Below, piece by piece: positions 9,997-54,557 of a DNA stretch of 64,000 nt; the stretch's first letter is position 1; each line of letters starts with the position of its first letter. A program made the position numbers and the translations under genes. A model generated the notes under the pieces. That model did no database searches. It saw only the letters and a list, made by a program, of their open reading frames with translations, and was not told the origin of the DNA. The stretch is from the IMG/VR virus record IMGVR_UViG_3300017991_005548, positions 1-64,000 of that record. One strand, written 5' to 3'.

Positions 9997-10084
9997 TGGT
10001 GGAGCCGACAGGATTCGAACCTGCGCGGAGCTTGCGCTCTCTTGATTAAAAGTCAAGTACCTTCAGCCACTCGGTTACGACTCC
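9997..10084 (-). tRNA. tRNA-Lys(UUU) with a long variable arm (88 nt)
   Basis: GGAGTCG/CGGCTCC acceptor, CTTGA-CTTTTAA-TCAAG anticodon arm, GAGC-GCAA-GCTC variable hairpin, GCAGG-TTCGAAT-CCTGT T arm, ACCA end. Confidence 0.85.
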
Positions 10085-23520: not shown

Positions 23521-24087
23521 TTAAAAAGATCCTTGTTGATATTCATAAACTGTTGGGGTTACATCAATAGATTTTTGGTTATATTCCCAAACATTTTGTG
23601 GGAAGCAAGCCTCTTCACAAACATCAACAACTTGGTCTTCTGAGAAATTCTGATAAGCAAGTGGAGCGTCAAGAGTGATGATGTCTTCTGCTCCATAGTT
23701 TCTGTAATGACCACTGTAAATCGCATCTATACAAACAGGTCCTTCGTTAATGACCCCTAAAAATGGGGGTGGTGAGAACTGCAATCCATTTATGTTTTCA
23801 AGTACATGTTGAATAGTACCATTAGTACACTCATAAGAACTTGAAGACGATTCATTACCAACAGATTCTGAAGATGAACTTTCTGCTCCAATAGATTCAG
23901 ATGATTCTGACAATGAACTTTCAGATGAAGAACTATCTAAAGCACATTCCAAACATGAATCAAAAACTTCTTCGATTTCAATTGGATAAGAATTAATAGG
24001 TTTTACGGTTTCACCGATCCATTTATAACAAACACCATTAATCTTAATGGATGCTCCTTGATAATCGTCAAATATTTTATTCGCCAT
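23521..24087 (-). CDS. Cys-module + poly-Ser + small Cys-bounded domain
   Basis: Shared N-module; FSPP...EGxVCI...GxEDxIxL...VxxVCExxC domain also in 11787..12995. Confidence 0.75.
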   Translation of the reverse strand: MANKIFDDYQGASIKINGVCYKWIGETVKPINSYPIEIEEVFDSCLECALDSSSSESSLSESSESIGAESSSSESVGNESSSSSYECTNGTIQHVLENINGLQFSPPPFLGVINEGPVCIDAIYSGHYRNYGAEDIITLDAPLAYQNFSEDQVVDVCEEACFPQNVWEYNQKSIDVTPTVYEYQQGSF

Positions 24088-24097
24088 AATTTACTCC

Positions 24098-25516
24098 TTA
24101 AACTGCTCCACCATCATAAACTGCTCCCCATTCTGATCCAATTGCAGTTCTCCCTGCTTCAGCGGCACCTCCCGCAGTGTATTTACTGTTGCCGAACGTT
24201 GGGATTCCTGCGGCAGGTTTTAACGATTGACCTCCCCATGAAATCAGAAGTGCATCATAGTTAGCAGTAGACAGGGCATCGTAAGGAGTGCCACGAGCTA
24301 TTTCTGCCATGAACTCATGTATTACTGTGACGTTAGAAACATCCCAGTTGCTGAGGTCTTGGTCAAAATTAGGTTGGAACCTAATGGCTTGTTGAATATC
24401 AGTAACGCTTGATGTATCCCACACCCCTATCGGCTGATTGAATACGCCTCTACTGGCTAAAGTTGCACCTAGCATATTTGCCAGTGTTGTCACGTTACCC
24501 ATGTTTGTAAAGTTTTGGATCGCGCCATTGAATAAAGGACAAGTATTAAACATACCTGAGCAGTCAGTGACACTATTCATGTCCCAGTTCCAATTTGCGC
24601 TTGCGCCTGTCATTCCAGTACATCCTGCGAACATCCATGAACAATCCGAACACGCCGACAAATCAGGCACATCAGATGCGGTGATTTCAAGGCCACTACA
24701 ACTCGAAAATGCGTTAGCCATCTGAGGCCACTGATACGTTCCCCACTGTCGAATTTCTTTGAGCTTTGATGCATATCCCCATCCTGAAATCCAACCAGAA
24801 GAAGAAGAGAAGTCAACAGACATTTCATACTCGGTATCTGCGTCAGGATAGATATGTTCGATTATAAATCCACCAGTAACCGTTTGTTGGTTTCCATCAC
24901 CCCAATCAATATATGTTGTGTTAGGGTTACCTATGTAAATTTGAACTGTTTTATTCTCTCCTGAATCCCACAATGCTTTAAAAAGATCACCCTCAGGGTA
25001 AGAACTGCTTGACGAACTTGAAGTTGAACATGGATCATCACAAACCTCTACAACTTGTCCAACCGAATACTTACTTGCCGCACCTGGCTCAACTAAAGAA
25101 ATACCAATCCAAAGACCAACATTTATCTCTCCAATATCATTTCCATTTACACAAACAAAACCTGAAAAAGTATTTAATGGAGAAGTTGATTCAAAGCCTA
25201 ATACATTTCCTACAATGGTTAATATTGAAACAGTGGCACAACCTTCTGAACTTGATGAAGAAACATTTTCTTCACTTTCTGAAGAATTGGAACTAGAAGA
25301 ACTGCTAACATTACCAATTGATTCAGAAGATGATGATTGAGTACTTTCTGATGAACTTGATTCAATAGCACATTCGAGACAATTATCAAAAACTTCTTCT
25401 ATTTCGCTTGGGCTTGAATTAACAGAACTAGTTGTTTCACCGATCCATTTATAACAAACCCCACCTATTTTAATTGATGCTCCTTGATAATCGTCAAATA
25501 TTTTTTCTCTACCCAT
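24098..25516 (-). CDS. Cys-module + poly-Ser + PKD-like + BspA/DUF285 leucine-rich repeat protein
   Basis: YIDWGDG; FNQPIGVWDTSSVT, FDQDLSNWDVSNVT repeats; LSTANYDALLISW. Confidence 0.8.
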   Translation of the reverse strand: MGREKIFDDYQGASIKIGGVCYKWIGETTSSVNSSPSEIEEVFDNCLECAIESSSSESTQSSSSESIGNVSSSSSSNSSESEENVSSSSSEGCATVSILTIVGNVLGFESTSPLNTFSGFVCVNGNDIGEINVGLWIGISLVEPGAASKYSVGQVVEVCDDPCSTSSSSSSSYPEGDLFKALWDSGENKTVQIYIGNPNTTYIDWGDGNQQTVTGGFIIEHIYPDADTEYEMSVDFSSSSGWISGWGYASKLKEIRQWGTYQWPQMANAFSSCSGLEITASDVPDLSACSDCSWMFAGCTGMTGASANWNWDMNSVTDCSGMFNTCPLFNGAIQNFTNMGNVTTLANMLGATLASRGVFNQPIGVWDTSSVTDIQQAIRFQPNFDQDLSNWDVSNVTVIHEFMAEIARGTPYDALSTANYDALLISWGGQSLKPAAGIPTFGNSKYTAGGAAEAGRTAIGSEWGAVYDGGAV

Positions 25517-25591
25517 AAAAAATCTCTCTAGATAATATTGATAAATAGTTCAATATATATATCTGAGAAACCTTTGGAAAAATAGAGAGTT

Positions 25592-25673
25592 TGGTATGGG
25601 GGGTGGGACTTGAACCCACAGAAATTCACTTGTTTATAAGACAAGCCGCTTAACCAAATTTGCGTACCCCCAC
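25592..25673 (-). tRNA. tRNA-Ile(UAU)
   Basis: CTTGT-CTTATAA-ACAAG anticodon arm; GTGGG-TTCAAGT-CCCAC; ACCA end; 9-nt variable region. Confidence 0.8.
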
Positions 25674-25689
25674 ACAGGTAAGAAGTTTT

Positions 25690-25796
25690 GGGGAGGTGGG
25701 GAGGCTCACTGGGGTAAGTGGCTTCTTATTATATTGCCGTCCATTGTGTCAGCCCGTTCTCCTTCTAACGGGTGTTTCCGATGACATGGCATCCCC
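25690..25796 (-). ncRNA. GC-rich structured RNA of unknown class inside the tRNA operon
   Basis: Nested pairings GGGGA/TCCCC, CCAT/ATGG, TGTCA/TGACA, CCCGTT/AACGGG; abuts tRNA-Val. Confidence 0.5.
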
Positions 25797-25798
25797 TT

Positions 25799-25875
25799 TG
25801 GTGGGCAGTACAGGACTCGAACCTGTCACGACCTCGGTGTAAACGAGGCATTCTAGCCAAATGAATTAACTGCCC
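25799..25875 (-). tRNA. tRNA-Val(UAC)
   Basis: CCTCG-TTTACAC-CGAGG; ACCA end. Confidence 0.9.
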
Positions 25876-25939
25876 AGTAAAATCATATTCGAAATACTTC
25901 TTTCATATTATAACCTAAATTTCCTTTAGTTCAACAAAC

Positions 25940-26019
25940 AAGCTGATTTATTTTTTGAAGGGTTTGAACCTTCTAGATGGTGTAAGCATCGTTAACCTGT
26001 TTTTTGCTGTAATCAGCCT
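25940..26019 (-). ncRNA. tRNA-mimic RNA with a Val(UAC) anticodon hairpin and a T arm inside a non-acceptor closing helix
   Basis: AGGCTGATT/AATCAGCTT closing stem; GATG-CTTACAC-CATC; GAAGG-TTCAAAC-CCTTC; no CCA. Confidence 0.55.
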
Positions 26020-26026
26020 TTATTTT

Positions 26027-26103
26027 TGGTGGACCTACACGGATTCGAACCGAGATTTCCTCCCTGCCAGAGAGGTGTGTTAGCCATTAGTCACTATAAG
26101 CCC
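26027..26103 (-). tRNA. tRNA-Ala(GGC)
   Basis: G3:U70; CCTCT-CTGGCAG-GGAGG; ACCA end. Confidence 0.85.
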
Positions 26104-26137
26104 TTTTTGTTTCATAACTCGTTGATAATTAACGACT

Positions 26138-26216
26138 TGGTGGAGACGGTCGGAATCGAACCGACCACATGCTGGTTGCAAACCAGTATCGCCAAAGCCT
26201 TGGTACATGCGCCCCC
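26138..26216 (-). tRNA. tRNA-Ala(UGC) with aberrant D arm
   Basis: G3:U70; loop TTTGCAA; canonical T arm; ACCA end; D region CATGTACCAAGGCTTTGGCGAT is non-canonical. Confidence 0.75.
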
Positions 26217-26221
26217 AAGTT

Positions 26222-26443
26222 TTAAACGCCTAATTCGTTATCCTCAAAAAACACAACATCCGAAATCGGTTCTAGTCTTTCGTATGTCTCATTCCATATT
26301 TCAATTTCTTCATCCGTCAATGCAACCTTGTCATTTTTACAGTTCCATCGATCTTTGTCTGGACACCAACAACTGCCTTCTGCATGTATCCATTGTGCCA
26401 TGCATTTCTCAAACATTTTCTTGTAATCTACGTTGTCTTCCAT
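26222..26443 (-). CDS. Small hypothetical protein inside the tRNA operon
   Basis: MEDNVDYKK start after a GGAG SD. Confidence 0.6.
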   Translation of the reverse strand: MEDNVDYKKMFEKCMAQWIHAEGSCWCPDKDRWNCKNDKVALTDEEIEIWNETYERLEPISDVVFFEDNELGV

Positions 26444-26480
26444 CGTCTGTCTCCAGTATCTGGTCATTTATACGGACATC

Positions 26481-26504
26481 ATGGCCACATAAATGGCCAC
26501 ATAA
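26481..26504. repeat. 12-bp tandem duplication (ATGGCCACATAA)x2
   Basis: Seen directly, just 3' of tRNA-Ala(UGC). Confidence 0.8.
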
Positions 26505-26508
26505 GTCT

Positions 26509-26585
26509 TGGTGGAGCATAAGAGACTCGAACTCTTGACATCCTGCTTGCAAAGCAGGTGCTCTAGCCATCTGAGCTAATGCCCC
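26509..26585 (-). tRNA. tRNA-Ala(UGC)
   Basis: Canonical cloverleaf, G3:U70, CCTGC-TTTGCAA-GCAGG, ACCA end. Confidence 0.92.
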
Positions 26586-26646
26586 AAAATACGGGATACC
26601 TAAGCATTGCCCGTTTTTGAATGGATGTCGAAACATTGCCATTCTT

Positions 26647-26739
26647 TGGTGGAGAAGATTGGAGTCGAACCAATTAAAATTGTTTGCCGAAGAGAGCCTT
26701 ATAACAAGCTCAGTTTGCCCTCCGCAGGGCATCTTCTCC
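26647..26739 (-). ncRNA. tRNA-like RNA: intact acceptor stem, T arm and CCA, non-tRNA core
   Basis: GGAGAAG/CTTCTCC-ACCA; ATTGG-TTCGACT-CCAAT; internal hairpins GCCCT/AGGGC and GAGCTT/AGGCTC; no 7-nt anticodon loop. Confidence 0.65.
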
Positions 26740-26776
26740 AGTTGTTTTAGAACTCTGTTCGTTAAAACATCGTTCT

Positions 26777-26853
26777 TGGTAGTTGGGACAGGACTCGAAC
26801 CTGCATCCTCCGATATGTAAAAACGGTGCTCCGCGCAATTAAGCTACCCAACC
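26777..26853 (-). tRNA. tRNA-Val(UAC), divergent
   Basis: Loop TTTACAT; U-U mismatch in the anticodon stem; D loop lacks GG; canonical T arm; ACCA end. Confidence 0.75.
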
Positions 26854-26879
26854 AACAATAATAAATTGTAAAAGATCAC

Positions 26880-26910
26880 AAAAAAAGCCCTGTCATTTCT
26901 GACAGGGCTT
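26880..26910 (-). terminator. Attenuator terminator upstream of the Val/Ala/Ile tRNA genes
   Basis: 9-bp stem GCCCTGTCA-GAAA-TGACAGGGC followed by U7. Confidence 0.9.
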
Positions 26911-26932
26911 AAACCGACTTCTGGAAACTACA

Positions 26933-27019
26933 TCATCCAGAAAGAGCAGAAAAGCCCTGCCCGTCTGCGACTACCGCGACGGCTACTACTGCTATGGCTA
27001 TTTCTACTCTCTTTTTCAT
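26933..27019 (-). CDS. Val/Ala/Ile-rich attenuator leader peptide MKKRVEIAIAVVAVAVVADGQGFSALSG (28 aa)
   Basis: GGAG SD 9 nt upstream; 12 consecutive Ile/Ala/Val codons; contains antiterminator segment GCAGGGCTT (26952-26960). Confidence 0.85.
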   Translation of the reverse strand: MKKRVEIAIAVVAVAVVADGQGFSALSG

Positions 27020-27047
27020 AAAACATATCTCCAGTTACGTTGCCCCT

Positions 27048-27075
27048 ATTATAAGGCATCTATTTGGCTTTTCAA
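27048..27075 (-). promoter_or_regulatory. sigma70-type promoter of the Val/Ala/Ile tRNA operon
   Basis: TTGAAA-N16-TATAAT followed by AGGGGCAAC; near-identical to 11735..11762. Confidence 0.75.
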
Positions 27076-27100
27076 GCTCGAATCGAAAATAAATTCGTCT

Positions 27101-53129: not shown

Positions 53130-54557
53130 TTAATCTTCCCACCATTGATCAACTTGCTCTAGTCCAAGACCTTTTAATTCTTGAATAGTTTCTTCTACAG
53201 ATTTACTGCCATAAATTCCGTATGTGTTCTCCATTTCTTCGCAAAAACCCCCAACCATTTTAAAAACTTGACACAAATACTGCCTTTCACTACTTCCAGC
53301 ATCATAATAAGAGTCTGCTAATTCTCCACTTTCCCTTCTAAAAGCAAAAGAGAAACAATCTTGGCTGAATTCTGGATCATATGGATCAAGCTTTGAAATA
53401 CAGAAAACACATGGATCTACTTCATCCGTTTTTAATTCCTGAAGGAGTCTCGCATTTTCTTCTGCCTTCACCAATACGTTGAGATCAAAAAACATCTTCT
53501 TGACCTCTTCCAGGTTATATGTCCCACCTTTGATCGTAACGGTTCTATCAGGCTCAATCGTGTAAAATGACTCATCCTCTTCAGGTTCATCTGGAACAAC
53601 TGGCGTTTTGGCGAAAAACGAATCTGGATACATAAACTGCATCCCAAGACGCTTCGCAAAAGTCTTATCAGTTGTTTGATCTCCAACCATAATGCATTCA
53701 CTCACATTCAGCTTGTATTTGTAAATATAAGGAATGGCCATCCCTGATTGAGGCTTACGGCAATAGCAACTTACTGGCGGAACCTTATGAGGACAATAAG
53801 AGACCTCAACATCATTACAAATTGCTAAAGTTGCATTCGTAACTTCGAAACACAACTCGGCACCTTTTTCAGTCAACTCGCCTTTTGCAATACCAGATTG
53901 GTTTGATACCCCAATAAGGTAATATCCAAGCTTTTTATAGGCCCGTAAGACCTCTCCCGCCCCTTTCCTTACTTTGATCTCTGTTGGCTTTGTAGGGTAC
54001 TTCCCATTGCCTCCAACAGTCTCCCTCAAAGTACCATCATAATCAAGGAAAATTGCTTTGTTTGTAAAACCCTCCCTTGGTTCCCTTCTGAACACTCTTT
54101 TCTCCACATTTTCAAAACCTTCGTCTTTCGTCGGTTTTTCAAATTCTTTCTTCATTTTGAAAAAGACAGAAATAGGGAACATGTTCGGATCTTTCTTAAC
54201 TTCTTTCAGATCCTCTTTGTCATAAAACACCTTGCCATATCGTTCCATCATCCTCTGCAAAGCATTAATCTGACAATCTTCCACAGAAGTTGACATCCAA
54301 AGACAACTGATCGGAACATCATGCTTCTTACACATCTCAATAAAAGGCTTGCGCTTATCTGCTTGCATAAAAGTGCAATCAAGAACAACAGAGTTCCCAT
54401 TTTTGAGAGAAGCCTCAAGTTTCGGCAACAAATCGAGTGTTCTCCCACCCTCTTTATCTCGGCTTAAATACGCATATGTATGCTTCTTCATGATTTCCTT
54501 TACTGCCGAGCTTTTCCCACTTGCAGGGAATCCAACCGTCATGATTGCTTTTTGCAT
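53130..54557 (-). CDS. Polynucleotide kinase/phosphatase-like protein (AAA_33 kinase + HAD-IIIA)
   Basis: GFPASGKS, VVLDCT, EPTKDEGF-like; FLDYDGT, SNQSG, CYCRKP, MVGD. Confidence 0.75.
   Translation of the reverse strand: MQKAIMTVGFPASGKSSAVKEIMKKHTYAYLSRDKEGGRTLDLLPKLEASLKNGNSVVLDCTFMQADKRKPFIEMCKKHDVPISCLWMSTSVEDCQINALQRMMERYGKVFYDKEDLKEVKKDPNMFPISVFFKMKKEFEKPTKDEGFENVEKRVFRREPREGFTNKAIFLDYDGTLRETVGGNGKYPTKPTEIKVRKGAGEVLRAYKKLGYYLIGVSNQSGIAKGELTEKGAELCFEVTNATLAICNDVEVSYCPHKVPPVSCYCRKPQSGMAIPYIYKYKLNVSECIMVGDQTTDKTFAKRLGMQFMYPDSFFAKTPVVPDEPEEDESFYTIEPDRTVTIKGGTYNLEEVKKMFFDLNVLVKAEENARLLQELKTDEVDPCVFCISKLDPYDPEFSQDCFSFAFRRESGELADSYYDAGSSERQYLCQVFKMVGGFCEEMENTYGIYGSKSVEETIQELKGLGLEQVDQWWED

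What the first reader, a model, noticed from the sequence alone, without database searches (positions are those of the whole stretch)
25940..26019. Non-chargeable tRNA-Val mimic inside the Val/Ala/Ile operon
Seen: a 9-bp closing helix AGGCTGATT/AATCAGCTT with A-rich linkers encloses an anticodon-like hairpin GATG-CU UAC AC-CATC and a T arm GAAGG-TTCAAAC-CCTTC. There is no acceptor geometry and no CCA. The loop matches that of the neighbouring tRNA-Val except at position 32. Established: YrlA-class bacterial Y RNAs join a terminal helix to a tRNA-like module. Inference: a decoy for anticodon nucleases, ValRS or modifying enzymes, or a Y-RNA-like partner of a Ro60/TROVE protein. Its anticodon matches an amino acid sensed by the leader.
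Basis: partly seen in the sequence, partly recalled or inferred. Interest (0 to 1): 0.6.

Follow-up and report, generated by a model that had tools for sequence, protein, structure and literature searches.

The report
Acceptor-less tRNA-Val-like RNA in a megaphage
An 80-base piece of a giant phage's tRNA operon carries a valine-type anticodon hairpin and a T arm but cannot be a working tRNA or a Y RNA; it looks like a rearranged offshoot of this phage's unusual insert-bearing tRNA genes, and whether it does anything is untested.

Summary
The sequence features are real. On the minus strand, 26019-25940 holds a 9-bp end-to-end helix, a 4-bp hairpin with loop CUUACAC, a 2-nt connector and a canonical T arm. 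There is no D arm, no acceptor geometry and no CCA. ARAGORN and Rfam (tRNA, YrlA, Y_RNA) do not call it.

The host sequence is an uncultivated marine megaphage (contig at least 524,692 bp) with more than 60 tRNA genes, a tmRNA, RtcB and a Pnkp-like gene. It has no TROVE/Ro60 gene, so the Y-RNA reading is not supported.

New here: the 5' linker (AGGCUG-AUUA-CAGCAA) is collinear with a conserved module (A-rich linker, hairpin HP1, 4 nt, CAGCAA, linker). In this phage and a few others that module sits between the D arm and the anticodon arm of otherwise normal tRNA bodies. In the candidate, HP1's partner strand lies after the T arm, so the parts appear circularly permuted and the acceptor and D arm are missing. 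The same phage has two circularly permuted tRNA genes.

Caveats:
- The closing helix is only borderline significant and competes with an alternative helix.
- A covariance model of the family scores the candidate at only 14 bits.
- No relative exists, so conservation cannot be tested.

Verdict: a tRNA-derived, non-chargeable element. Function is unproven, and a decaying remnant remains a strong rival.

The parts
26011..26019 (-). 5' strand of the end-to-end helix (AGGCUGAUU). Its first six bases, AGGCUG, align with the 3' strand (AGGUUC) of hairpin HP1 of the conserved tRNA-insert module.
   Evidence: fold; collinearity with the family: AGGUUC-N4-CAGCAA.
26004..26010 (-). A + CAGCAA motif. AUUACAGCAA is identical to the same stretch in the module of a tRNA-Lys-like gene of another phage contig (L033).
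   Evidence: The regex CAGCAA..AAAACAG hits only this site and insert-tRNA 'A' in 2 x 296 kb, and nothing in the extra 212 kb.
25991..26003 (-). 13-nt A-rich linker (J2-like) between CAGCAA and the anticodon-type hairpin. Family members have 6-13 nt here.
25976..25990 (-). Anticodon-type hairpin: 4-bp stem GAUG/CAUC and 7-nt loop CUUACAC (U33, anticodon UAC at 25984-25982, A37).
   Evidence: pair probability about 0.6-0.7. Family member G has the same 4-bp + 7-nt format.
25974..25975 (-). 2-nt connector (UA) where a tRNA has a 4-5-nt variable region.
25957..25973 (-). T arm: 5-bp stem GAAGG/CCUUC and loop UUCAAAC.
   Evidence: pair probability about 0.98.
25949..25956 (-). 8-nt A-rich linker (AAAAAAUA). 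It resembles the A-rich J1 linker that precedes HP1 in the family.
   Evidence: family J1 consensus UAAAAAnU.
25940..25948 (-). 3' strand of the end-to-end helix (AAUCAGCUU). Its last six bases, CAGCUU, are the HP1 5'-strand equivalent (family GAACYU) and keep the same U.G wobble.
26027..26103 (-). Context: tRNA-Ala(GGC), 7 nt upstream of the element.
25799..25875 (-). Context: tRNA-Val(UAC), 64 nt downstream.
25907..25934 (-). Context: sigma-70-like promoter match (TTGAAC-16-TATAAT) starting 6 nt after the element. This would place the element at the 3' end of a transcription unit. It is a consensus match only.
   Evidence: 4 sites found against 4.2 expected in shuffles, so not significant on its own.

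Best explanation
The element is a tRNA-derived RNA made of two adjacent hairpins: a valine-type anticodon arm and a T arm. It is neither a tRNA nor a Y RNA.

It carries every part of a conserved module: an A-rich linker J1, hairpin HP1, four bases, CAGCAA, and linker J2. In this megaphage and a few other phages that module is inserted between the D arm and the anticodon arm of otherwise normal tRNA bodies. These inserts resemble the 'enigmatic introns' reported in megaphage tRNAs.

In the candidate the parts are circularly permuted. The order is HP1 3' strand, N4, CAGCAA, J2, anticodon arm, T arm, J1, HP1 5' strand. HP1 therefore becomes the end-to-end helix, and the acceptor stem and D arm are absent.

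I infer the following. The element descends from a module-bearing tRNA-Val gene by rearrangement within the tRNA array. It is co-transcribed as the last element of the Val/Ala/Ile tRNA unit and freed when the flanking tRNAs are processed. It cannot be charged.

If it acts at all, it most likely acts by presenting the module plus an anticodon arm to whatever handles the module-bearing tRNAs. That could be an unknown endonuclease working with the phage RtcB ligase, or an enzyme that binds the anticodon arm. Its role would then be a processing substrate or a competitor.

Shown: the anatomy, the shared motifs, the reality and conservation of the module, and the absence of Ro. Inferred: the permutation origin, the co-transcription and any activity.
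For: (1) Anatomy and non-tRNA status.

(2) The module is real and conserved.
- The Rfam tRNA model calls four tRNA bodies with 50-71-nt inserts.
- Parsing shows acceptor, D arm, J1, HP1, N4, C(A/U)GCAA, J2, then a 4-5-bp anticodon arm with a 7-nt loop, a variable region and a T arm, in B, G and H.
- The same module occurs in tRNA-Glu(UUC)-like and tRNA-Lys(UUU)-like genes of other phage contigs.
- HP1 is 100% paired in 10 sequences, 3 of 6 pairs show compensatory changes, and 0 of 500 shuffles reach that score.
- Hairpin+CAGCAA outside tRNA contexts occurs at background rate.

(3) The candidate is collinear with the family.
- AGGCUG-AUUA-CAGCAA matches family AGGUUC-N4-CAGCAA with the same spacing, and its 10-mer is identical to L033's.
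- J2 length, the 4-bp/7-nt anticodon arm and the T arm follow as in G, H and B.

(4) The partner of AGGCUG (CAGCUU, same U.G wobble) lies after the T arm. It is preceded by an A-run like J1 and followed by G, which is the first loop base in the family. The 5' flank ends in AUAA like the family loop. For that pre-named 9-mer, full pairing in the downstream spacer has probability 0.0005 (at most 1 G.U) to 0.02 (any G.U).

(5) Permutation has precedent in the same genome. Two loci have a tRNA 3' half upstream of its 5' half. Once rejoined, ARAGORN calls them tRNAs whatever 7-nt loop is supplied.

(6) All 18 proposed pairs are intact, although no paralogue shares more than 12 identical bases.

(7) RtcB lies next to module-tRNA G, an HNH endonuclease ORF lies next to H, and a Pnkp-like gene is in the window.
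Against: - A covariance model built from four family members scores the candidate at only 14.3 bits (E 0.12). That is below many partial hits to ordinary tRNAs, whereas member A scores 36 bits. Homology therefore rests on motifs and order, not on a significant score.
- Unbiased tests of the closing helix are borderline (5.8-15%). An alternative helix is about as probable in the spacer context.
- The element's GC content (36%) is that of the genome background, not of its tRNAs (48-57%).
- No second permuted copy was found in this genome, in other module-bearing phages or in public collections.
- Three metagenomes hold the same strain with zero differences, so there is no covariation evidence.
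- No RNA data exist.
- Producing this order from a normal gene needs several rearrangement steps.
Confidence: 0.4

Rival explanations
1. Non-functional remnant. An internal fragment (CAGCAA, linker, anticodon arm, T arm) of a module-bearing tRNA gene was left behind by duplication, deletion or homing-endonuclease-driven rearrangement in the tRNA array. The end-to-end helix is a chance pairing of A/U-rich flanks.
For: - The closing helix is not significant in unbiased shuffles (5.8-15%) and competes with another helix.
- The family covariance model scores it low.
- GC content equals background.
- The 2-nt connector and 4-bp anticodon stem depart from tRNA geometry.
- It is a single copy found in no other genome.
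- Other tRNA fragments and an HNH ORF occur in these arrays.
Against: - Both hairpins and the helix are perfectly paired, and both loops keep canonical residues (U33, R37, UUCRA), yet there is no close paralogue, which argues against both recent origin and free decay.
- The helix uses exactly the HP1-equivalent bases and keeps the family's U.G wobble.
Confidence: 0.35
2. Stand-alone anticodon-arm decoy. The RNA titrates a host anticodon nuclease, ValRS or a tRNA-modifying enzyme that recognises the tRNA-Val(UAC) anticodon arm, independently of the CAGCAA module.
For: - The loop CUUACAC is a good Val(UAC) anticodon loop.
- The phage invests in tRNA supply and repair: more than 60 tRNAs, RtcB and a Pnkp-like gene.
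- Phage tRNAs are known to counter tRNA-cleaving defences (PMC10264068, PMC11555353, PMC11464382; seen only as titles and abstracts).
Against: - Known counter-measures are intact, chargeable tRNAs, not acceptor-less mimics.
- To my knowledge no Val-specific anticodon nuclease is known.
- The 4-bp stem has only about 0.6-0.7 pairing probability.
- There is no conservation.
Confidence: 0.1
3. Middle piece of a split or permuted tRNA-Val. The anticodon arm plus T arm is joined by RtcB to separately encoded acceptor and D-arm pieces.
For: Two permuted tRNA genes and an RtcB gene exist in the same phage. The half-module flanks resemble the complementary leaders of split tRNAs (own knowledge of archaeal split tRNAs).
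Against: - No partner pieces carrying AAUCAGCUU- or AGGCUGAUU-like strands in a tRNA-like context were seen in 508 kb (noisy and read by eye).
- The two half-helices pair with each other in cis.
- The 2-nt connector is too short for a tRNA core.
- Two normal tRNA-Val(UAC) genes already exist.
Confidence: 0.05
4. 3'-end structure of the upstream tRNA transcription unit, acting as a stabiliser or weak terminator just before the next promoter.
For: A promoter-like TTGAAC-16-TATAAT starts 6 nt after the element. The helix is followed by GUUUGUUG.
Against: The terminator scan finds nothing here. The helix is A/U-rich and branched, and the promoter count equals the chance expectation.
Confidence: 0.05
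5. Y RNA-like (YrlA-class) partner of a Ro60/TROVE protein.
For: Only the general layout: a terminal helix plus a tRNA-like T arm.
Against: - No YrlA or Y_RNA hit at E<=10.
- No TROVE domain in G000 or the 476-kb contig, with working positive controls.
- No D-arm mimic and no bulged Ro-binding helix.
Confidence: 0.02

Closest known systems
'Enigmatic' conserved introns in Lak megaphage tRNA genes (Devoto et al. 2019, PMC6784885; read)
   Same: Both are huge-phage tRNA genes interrupted by short, highly conserved inserts of unknown processing. The module-bearing tRNA bodies of this phage (A, B, C, E, G, H) are of that general kind, and the candidate shares their module motifs.
   Different: The Lak introns were predicted with eukaryote-mode tRNAscan, which places introns in the anticodon loop. 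Here the insert lies between the D arm and the anticodon arm and has a defined HP1 + CAGCAA signature. The candidate itself has no acceptor or D arm, and its module is split around the anticodon and T arms. No sequence comparison with the Lak introns was made.
YrlA / bacterial Y RNAs (Rfam RF02553, RF00019)
   Same: A terminal helix formed by the 5' and 3' ends, plus a T-arm-containing tRNA-like part.
   Different: There is no covariance-model match, no D-arm or acceptor mimic and no Ro-binding bulged helix. The phage has no TROVE gene.
Circularly permuted tRNA genes (Cyanidioschyzon merolae) and split tRNA genes of Archaea (own knowledge; review PMC4033280 listed, not read)
   Same: Gene order is rearranged relative to the RNA's folded topology. 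The same phage has two loci with the 3' half upstream of the 5' half. An RtcB-type ligase is present.
   Different: Those systems restore a complete tRNA and use a BHB motif with EndA. Here no EndA domain was found, and the candidate lacks the acceptor and D arm, so no full tRNA can result.
Phage tRNAs that evade or neutralise tRNA-cleaving defences (PMC10264068, PMC11555353, PMC11464382; abstracts seen)
   Same: A phage-encoded tRNA-related RNA in a genome rich in tRNA and RNA-repair genes, with an anticodon loop differing from a neighbouring isoacceptor at position 32.
   Different: Those are complete, chargeable tRNAs. The candidate cannot be charged, and no targeting nuclease is known for it.
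tRNA pseudogenes and fragments in tRNA arrays
   Same: It lies inside a tRNA array, retains only part of a tRNA and is not called by tRNA finders.
   Different: The stems are all intact and the loop signatures are canonical, yet no parent paralogue is recognisable.

Membership tests
Canonical tRNA | 7-bp acceptor stem whose 3' strand directly follows the T stem, plus discriminator and CCA (encoded in this genome's tRNAs) | tested here: not met
   Eight A-rich bases separate the T stem from the 3' helix strand. There is no CCA; the next bases are GUUUGUUG. The other tRNAs here end in CCA.
Canonical tRNA | D arm and a 4-5-nt variable region | tested here: not met
   A 20-nt unpaired A-rich linker stands in place of the D arm, and the connector is 2 nt.
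Canonical tRNA | Score above threshold in tRNA models | tested here: not met
   No Rfam RF00005 hit at E<=10 in a 1.7-kb search. ARAGORN gives no call at default or at -ps80 with introns allowed.
Canonical tRNA | 7-nt anticodon loop with U33 and a purine at 37; T loop UUCRANY | tested here: met
   Loops CUUACAC and UUCAAAC.
YrlA / Y RNA | Match to the Rfam covariance models | tested here: not met
   No YrlA or Y_RNA match at E<=10 over 25400-27100.
YrlA / Y RNA | A Ro60/TROVE protein encoded with it or in the genome | tested here: not met
   PF05731 is absent from G000 (296 kb) and G001 (476 kb), and the controls hit Deinococcus and Bacteroides. The host genome is unknown, so a host Ro cannot be excluded.
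YrlA / Y RNA | tRNA-like module with a D-arm mimic and acceptor-like stem, plus a bulged Ro-binding helix | tested here: not met
   No D-arm-like pairing exists, and the terminal helix is a plain 9-bp duplex.
Module-bearing (insert) tRNAs of huge phages | HP1 hairpin, then 3-4 nt, then C(A/U)GCAA | tested here: inconclusive
   AGGCUG-AUUA-CAGCAA is collinear with the family. However, the HP1 partner strand lies 3' of the T arm rather than immediately upstream. The pairing has P 0.0005-0.02 for the pre-named segment but 5.8-15% in unbiased tests.
Module-bearing (insert) tRNAs of huge phages | CAGCAA followed by a 6-13-nt linker, an anticodon arm (4-5 bp, 7-nt loop), a short variable region and a T arm | tested here: met
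   The descriptor scan returns the candidate together with B, G, H, L071, L087 and L039. The variable region is only 2 nt, against 4-5 in the others.
Module-bearing (insert) tRNAs of huge phages | Complete acceptor stem and D arm around the module | tested here: not met
   Both are absent.
Module-bearing (insert) tRNAs of huge phages | Significant score with a family covariance model | tested here: not met
   R1 gives 14.3 bits (E 0.12) for the candidate and 36.3 bits for the held-out member A. Ordinary tRNAs reach 20-29 bits on the anticodon and T-arm part alone.
Circularly permuted / split tRNA gene | Two halves that rejoin into a full cloverleaf | tested here: not met
   This holds for loci F and F2 but not for the candidate. 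No acceptor or D-arm pieces were found beside it or elsewhere.
Intrinsic terminator | G+C-rich hairpin followed by a U run | tested here: not met
   The scan lists only 26910-26885 in this region.

The most novel reading that the evidence does not exclude
The element is a working, circularly permuted 'mini' version of a new class of phage tRNA insert. Its two half-module ends pair as HP1 and are recognised by the same unknown endonuclease, together with the phage RtcB, that processes module-bearing and permuted tRNA genes in this megaphage. The product would be a small, possibly circular RNA displaying a tRNA-Val anticodon arm and T arm. That RNA would regulate or compete in tRNA processing, modification or cleavage. 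It would be one visible piece of an archaea-like disrupted-tRNA-gene system in a bacteriophage.
Probability: 0.15. Interest if true: 0.8.

Novelty: new variant of a known kind. Interest (0 to 1): 0.45.

Why it matters
Taken alone, the element is a single-genome oddity. Its motifs, however, led to two things that deserve attention. First, a conserved, covarying RNA module sits between the D arm and the anticodon arm of tRNA genes in several huge phages. Second, two circularly permuted tRNA genes lie in the same megaphage, next to genes for RtcB and a Pnkp-like enzyme. If these are processed, a bacteriophage carries a disrupted-tRNA maturation pathway of a kind I know only from Archaea and some algae. 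The candidate would then be a natural minimal substrate or competitor for it. If it is instead only a remnant, it still records how such arrays rearrange.

Tried and rejected
- **Exact and degenerate DNA patterns for the candidate.** In IMG/VR and JGI metagenome contigs, only the same phage was found, on contigs of 476,248 and 524,692 bp. Every other hit was a chance match in coding DNA.
- **Neighbour protein (81-aa ORF) as a route to relatives.** It hit only itself.
- **Natural variation from sequencing runs.** Two further metagenomes carry the identical sequence with 0 differences over 25674-26059. No RNA runs were listed.
- **Cultured and GenBank phages.** Only ordinary tRNAs matched.
- **Rfam.** At E<=10 on the locus and E<=1 on the other tRNA clusters, no ribozyme, Y RNA or other family explains the candidate or the module.
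- **TROVE and EndA domains.** Both are absent.
- **Covariance model R1.** On four other megaphage records the top hits were ordinary tRNAs. On four module-bearing records there was one family member each and nothing like the candidate.
- **Trans partners of the helix strands.** None was found in a tRNA-like context, but the output was noisy and cut.
- **Defining the insert boundary.** Aligning G and H with canonical Cys and Asn tRNAs was uninformative.
- **The 125-nt Val-Ile spacer as a second structured RNA.** z -0.73; rejected.
- **The idea that the inserts sit in the anticodon loop** (Rfam's parse). Rejected for B, G and H, because a separate 7-nt-loop anticodon arm follows the module.

The read-laying run used 3,001 bases.

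Full report
**Setting.** The window is the first 64 kb of a 296,327-bp IMG/VR virus record. The same sequence lies on a 476,248-bp IMG/VR contig at offset +212,352 and on a 524,692-bp JGI contig. This is therefore an uncultivated marine-sediment and seawater megaphage of more than 0.5 Mb. Genes and tRNAs in the window run on the minus strand. ARAGORN finds 46 tRNAs in the 296-kb record and 13 more plus a tmRNA in the extra 212 kb, grouped by amino acid. The phage also encodes RtcB, a Pnkp-like kinase/phosphatase and an amber-suppressor-type tRNA(CUA).

**The observation.** The candidate lies on the minus strand between tRNA-Ala(GGC) (26103-26027) and tRNA-Val(UAC) (25875-25799). It reads as follows:
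- 9-bp helix strand AGGCUGAUU
- 20-nt A-rich linker
- hairpin GAUG-CUUACAC-CAUC
- UA connector
- T arm GAAGG-UUCAAAC-CCUUC
- 8-nt A-rich linker
- helix strand AAUCAGCUU

RNAfold returns exactly this structure for the 80-mer (-15.1 kcal/mol, z -2.25). The loop differs from that of the neighbouring tRNA-Val only at position 32. The element is not a tRNA. It has no D arm, no acceptor/T-stem continuity and no CCA, and its variable region is 2 nt. ARAGORN gives no call, even relaxed and with introns allowed, and Rfam gives no tRNA hit at E<=10.

**How solid is the fold?** The T arm (pair probability about 0.98) and the anticodon-type hairpin (0.6-0.7) are robust. The closing helix is near 1.0 in the isolated 80-mer. 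It falls to 0.36-0.61 when spacer flanks are included, because AAACAGGUU can pair with AGCUUGUUU instead at about 0.34. With shuffled flanks, a helix of 9 bp or more arises in 15% of trials, or 5.8% with at most one G.U. By itself, then, the helix is not beyond chance.

**The Y RNA reading.** No YrlA or Y_RNA covariance-model match appears at E<=10. No TROVE domain exists in either phage record, and the positive controls hit. No D-arm mimic is present. This interpretation is not supported.

**What the ACAGCAA linker belongs to.** A scan for T arms not covered by tRNA calls found about a dozen further tRNA-like elements. Rfam's tRNA model calls four of them as tRNA bodies with 50-71-nt inserts. 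Closer parsing shows a common architecture in B, G and H:
- acceptor and D arm
- A-rich linker J1
- 6-bp hairpin HP1 (GAACYU, loop GAnAUA, AGGUUC)
- four bases
- C(A/U)GCAA
- 6-13-nt linker J2
- a separate anticodon arm of 4-5 bp with a 7-nt loop
- variable region, T arm and acceptor

In B, G and H the insert therefore sits between the D arm and the anticodon arm, not in the anticodon loop.

The same module occurs in other phage contigs: two tRNA-Glu(UUC)-like genes, one tRNA-Lys(UUU)-like gene and a 501-kb contig. In ten sequences HP1 is 100% paired, three of six pairs show compensatory changes, and no shuffle reaches that score. Hairpin+CAGCAA is not enriched outside tRNA contexts. Conserved 'enigmatic introns' in megaphage tRNAs were reported for Lak phages (PMC6784885). 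I did not compare sequences with those.

**The candidate against this family.** From AGG to the end of CAGCAA the candidate is collinear with the family without gaps (AGGCUG-AUUA-CAGCAA against AGGUUC-N4-CAGCAA). AUUACAGCAA is identical in L033. After that come J2 (13 nt), a 4-bp/7-nt anticodon arm as in G, and a T arm.

What is missing upstream is the HP1 5' strand with J1. It is found downstream, directly after the T arm: an A-run like J1, then CAGCUU, which pairs with AGGCUG using the same U.G wobble as family members A, B and F. The next base is G, which is the first loop base in the family, and the 5' flank ends in AUAA like the family loop. For this pre-named segment, full pairing within the downstream spacer has probability 0.0005 to 0.02.

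Permutation has a precedent in the same genome. After each of two tRNA-Glu genes lies a tRNA 3' half, followed 49 or 100 nt later by the matching 5' half. In one of these, the linking sequence is the module itself. When the halves are rejoined in silico, ARAGORN calls a tRNA whatever 7-nt loop is supplied.

**Limits.** A covariance model built from B, G, H and C finds held-out member A at 36 bits. It scores the candidate at only 14.3 bits (E 0.12), below partial hits to ordinary tRNAs. No second copy in the candidate's order was found anywhere. The only other occurrences are the same strain with no differences. No paralogue shares more than 12 identical bases. That makes the intact 18 pairs mildly suggestive of constraint, but the element cannot be dated. 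No RNA data were available.

**Mechanism.** Shown: the anatomy, the non-chargeability, the absence of Ro, the reality of the module, and the shared motifs and their order. Inferred: that the element descends from a module-bearing tRNA-Val gene; that it is co-transcribed at the end of a tRNA unit, given a promoter-like site that starts 6 nt downstream (though such sites are no more frequent here than in shuffles); and that it is released when the flanking tRNAs are processed.

If it is active, the most economical idea is that it offers HP1+CAGCAA plus an anticodon arm to whatever acts on module-bearing tRNAs. RtcB lies next to member G. No EndA-type endonuclease was found. I put about 0.4 on this reading, of which the origin part is the firmer. 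I put about 0.35 on a non-functional remnant. The rest is split among a module-independent decoy, a split-tRNA piece, a 3'-end structure and a Y RNA.

**Verdict.** The 'non-chargeable tRNA-Val mimic' description is sound. The Y-RNA/Ro idea is not supported, and the decoy idea is untested. The element is best filed as a new variant of tRNA-derived elements, tied to megaphage insert-bearing tRNAs. On its own it is of moderate interest. The module family and the permuted tRNA genes found along the way are the more notable leads.

Noticed in passing
L008:1057-1174 (B), L008:559-686 (C), L010:2181-2299 (A), L010:2030-2163 (E), L054:5801-5917 (G), L054:3373-3497 (H); other phages L071:3460-3543, L087:1585-1680, L033:14681-14766, L065:5013-5062: tRNA bodies carry a conserved module (A-rich linker, hairpin GAACYU/AGGUUC with loop GAnAUA, 4 nt, CAGCAA, linker). 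In B, G and H it lies between the D arm and a separate anticodon arm. HP1 covaries across 10 sequences from several phages. The anticodon loops read GAG, GCA (with U73) and AUU (with G73) here, and UUC and UUU in other phages. A and C enclose the module in a stem instead. E has AGCAA after a different hairpin and may not belong.
   Followed up: partly
L008:360-474 (F = G000 69573-69459) and L008:788-954 (F2 = G000 70053-69887), minus strand: Two apparent circularly permuted tRNA genes. The 3' half (anticodon-stem 3' strand, variable region, T arm, acceptor 3' strand) directly follows a tRNA-Glu. The matching 5' half lies 49 or 100 nt downstream. Acceptor and anticodon stems are complementary in both copies with different sequences. 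ARAGORN calls the rejoined halves as tRNAs. The true anticodon loop and junction are unresolved. I know of no report of permuted tRNA genes in a phage.
   Followed up: partly
window 26138-26216 (-): An unusual tRNA-Ala(UGC) with G3:U70 and an atypical D region (CAUGUACCAAGGCUUUGGCGA). ARAGORN misses it and Rfam scores it as a tmRNA-like tRNA domain. The same D-region signature occurs in 25 other IMG/VR phage contigs and in two 630-640-kb GenBank phage records, with covarying stems.
   Followed up: partly
window 26647-26739 (-): A 93-nt tRNA-like gene with a normal acceptor, D arm, T arm and CCA. Its anticodon region is odd: either a 6-bp stem with loop GUUAUA (or an 8-nt loop containing UAU), or a 10-nt intron in ARAGORN's reading. 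It also has a long extra region. It may be a second Ile(UAU)-type tRNA.
   Followed up: no
window 27075-26885 (-): promoter-like 27075-27048, small ORF 27019-26933, terminator 26910-26885: A strong promoter match (11/12) precedes a 28-codon ORF rich in Val, Ala and Ile (MKKRVEIAIAVVAVAVVADGQGFSALSG). Its codons (GUA x4, AUA x2, GCA, GCC) match the anticodons of the tRNAs that follow (UAC, UAU, UGC, GGC). An 11-bp terminator with a U run comes next, just before the tRNA array. It could be a leader-peptide attenuator of a tRNA operon or a small membrane peptide. Alternative pairings were not examined.
   Followed up: partly
L054:573-953 (tmRNA), L054:6013-7281 (RtcB), L054:3505-4377 (HNH), window 53130-54557 (Pnkp-like), L011:396-470 (tRNA-CUA): The phage extends well beyond the 296-kb 'provirus' record; a contig of 524,692 bp exists. 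It encodes its own tmRNA (tag AKKVIEFPTASAVAA), RtcB beside a Gln/Asn tRNA cluster, an HNH endonuclease ORF within that cluster, a polynucleotide kinase/phosphatase-like protein and an amber-reading tRNA. The 'provirus' label looks doubtful, since the flanking 212 kb has phage-like content and composition.
   Followed up: partly
L065:4900-5150 (-), contig IMGVR_UViG_3300032250_000749 (501,538 bp): Three successive 'helix + 2-3 nt + (A)CAGCAA' units lie outside an obvious tRNA body. The first helix encloses an anticodon-like hairpin with loop CUGGCCA. This may be a larger structured RNA built from the same motif.
   Followed up: no
window 9997-10084 (-), and G000 70056-70146, 90835-90925, 105941-106028: Many isoacceptors come in pairs: a normal-length tRNA and a long (86-92 nt) variant with an extended variable region, for amino acids that normally have short ones (Lys, Glu, Ile, Cys). 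tRNA-Leu also has copies of only 76-77 nt.
   Followed up: no
window 23941-24082 and 25367-25507: An internal repeat of about 140 nt at 81% identity links the start of the 472-aa ORF (24098-25516) with sequence just downstream of it. Reads from other contigs also pile up at 25409-25509.
   Followed up: no
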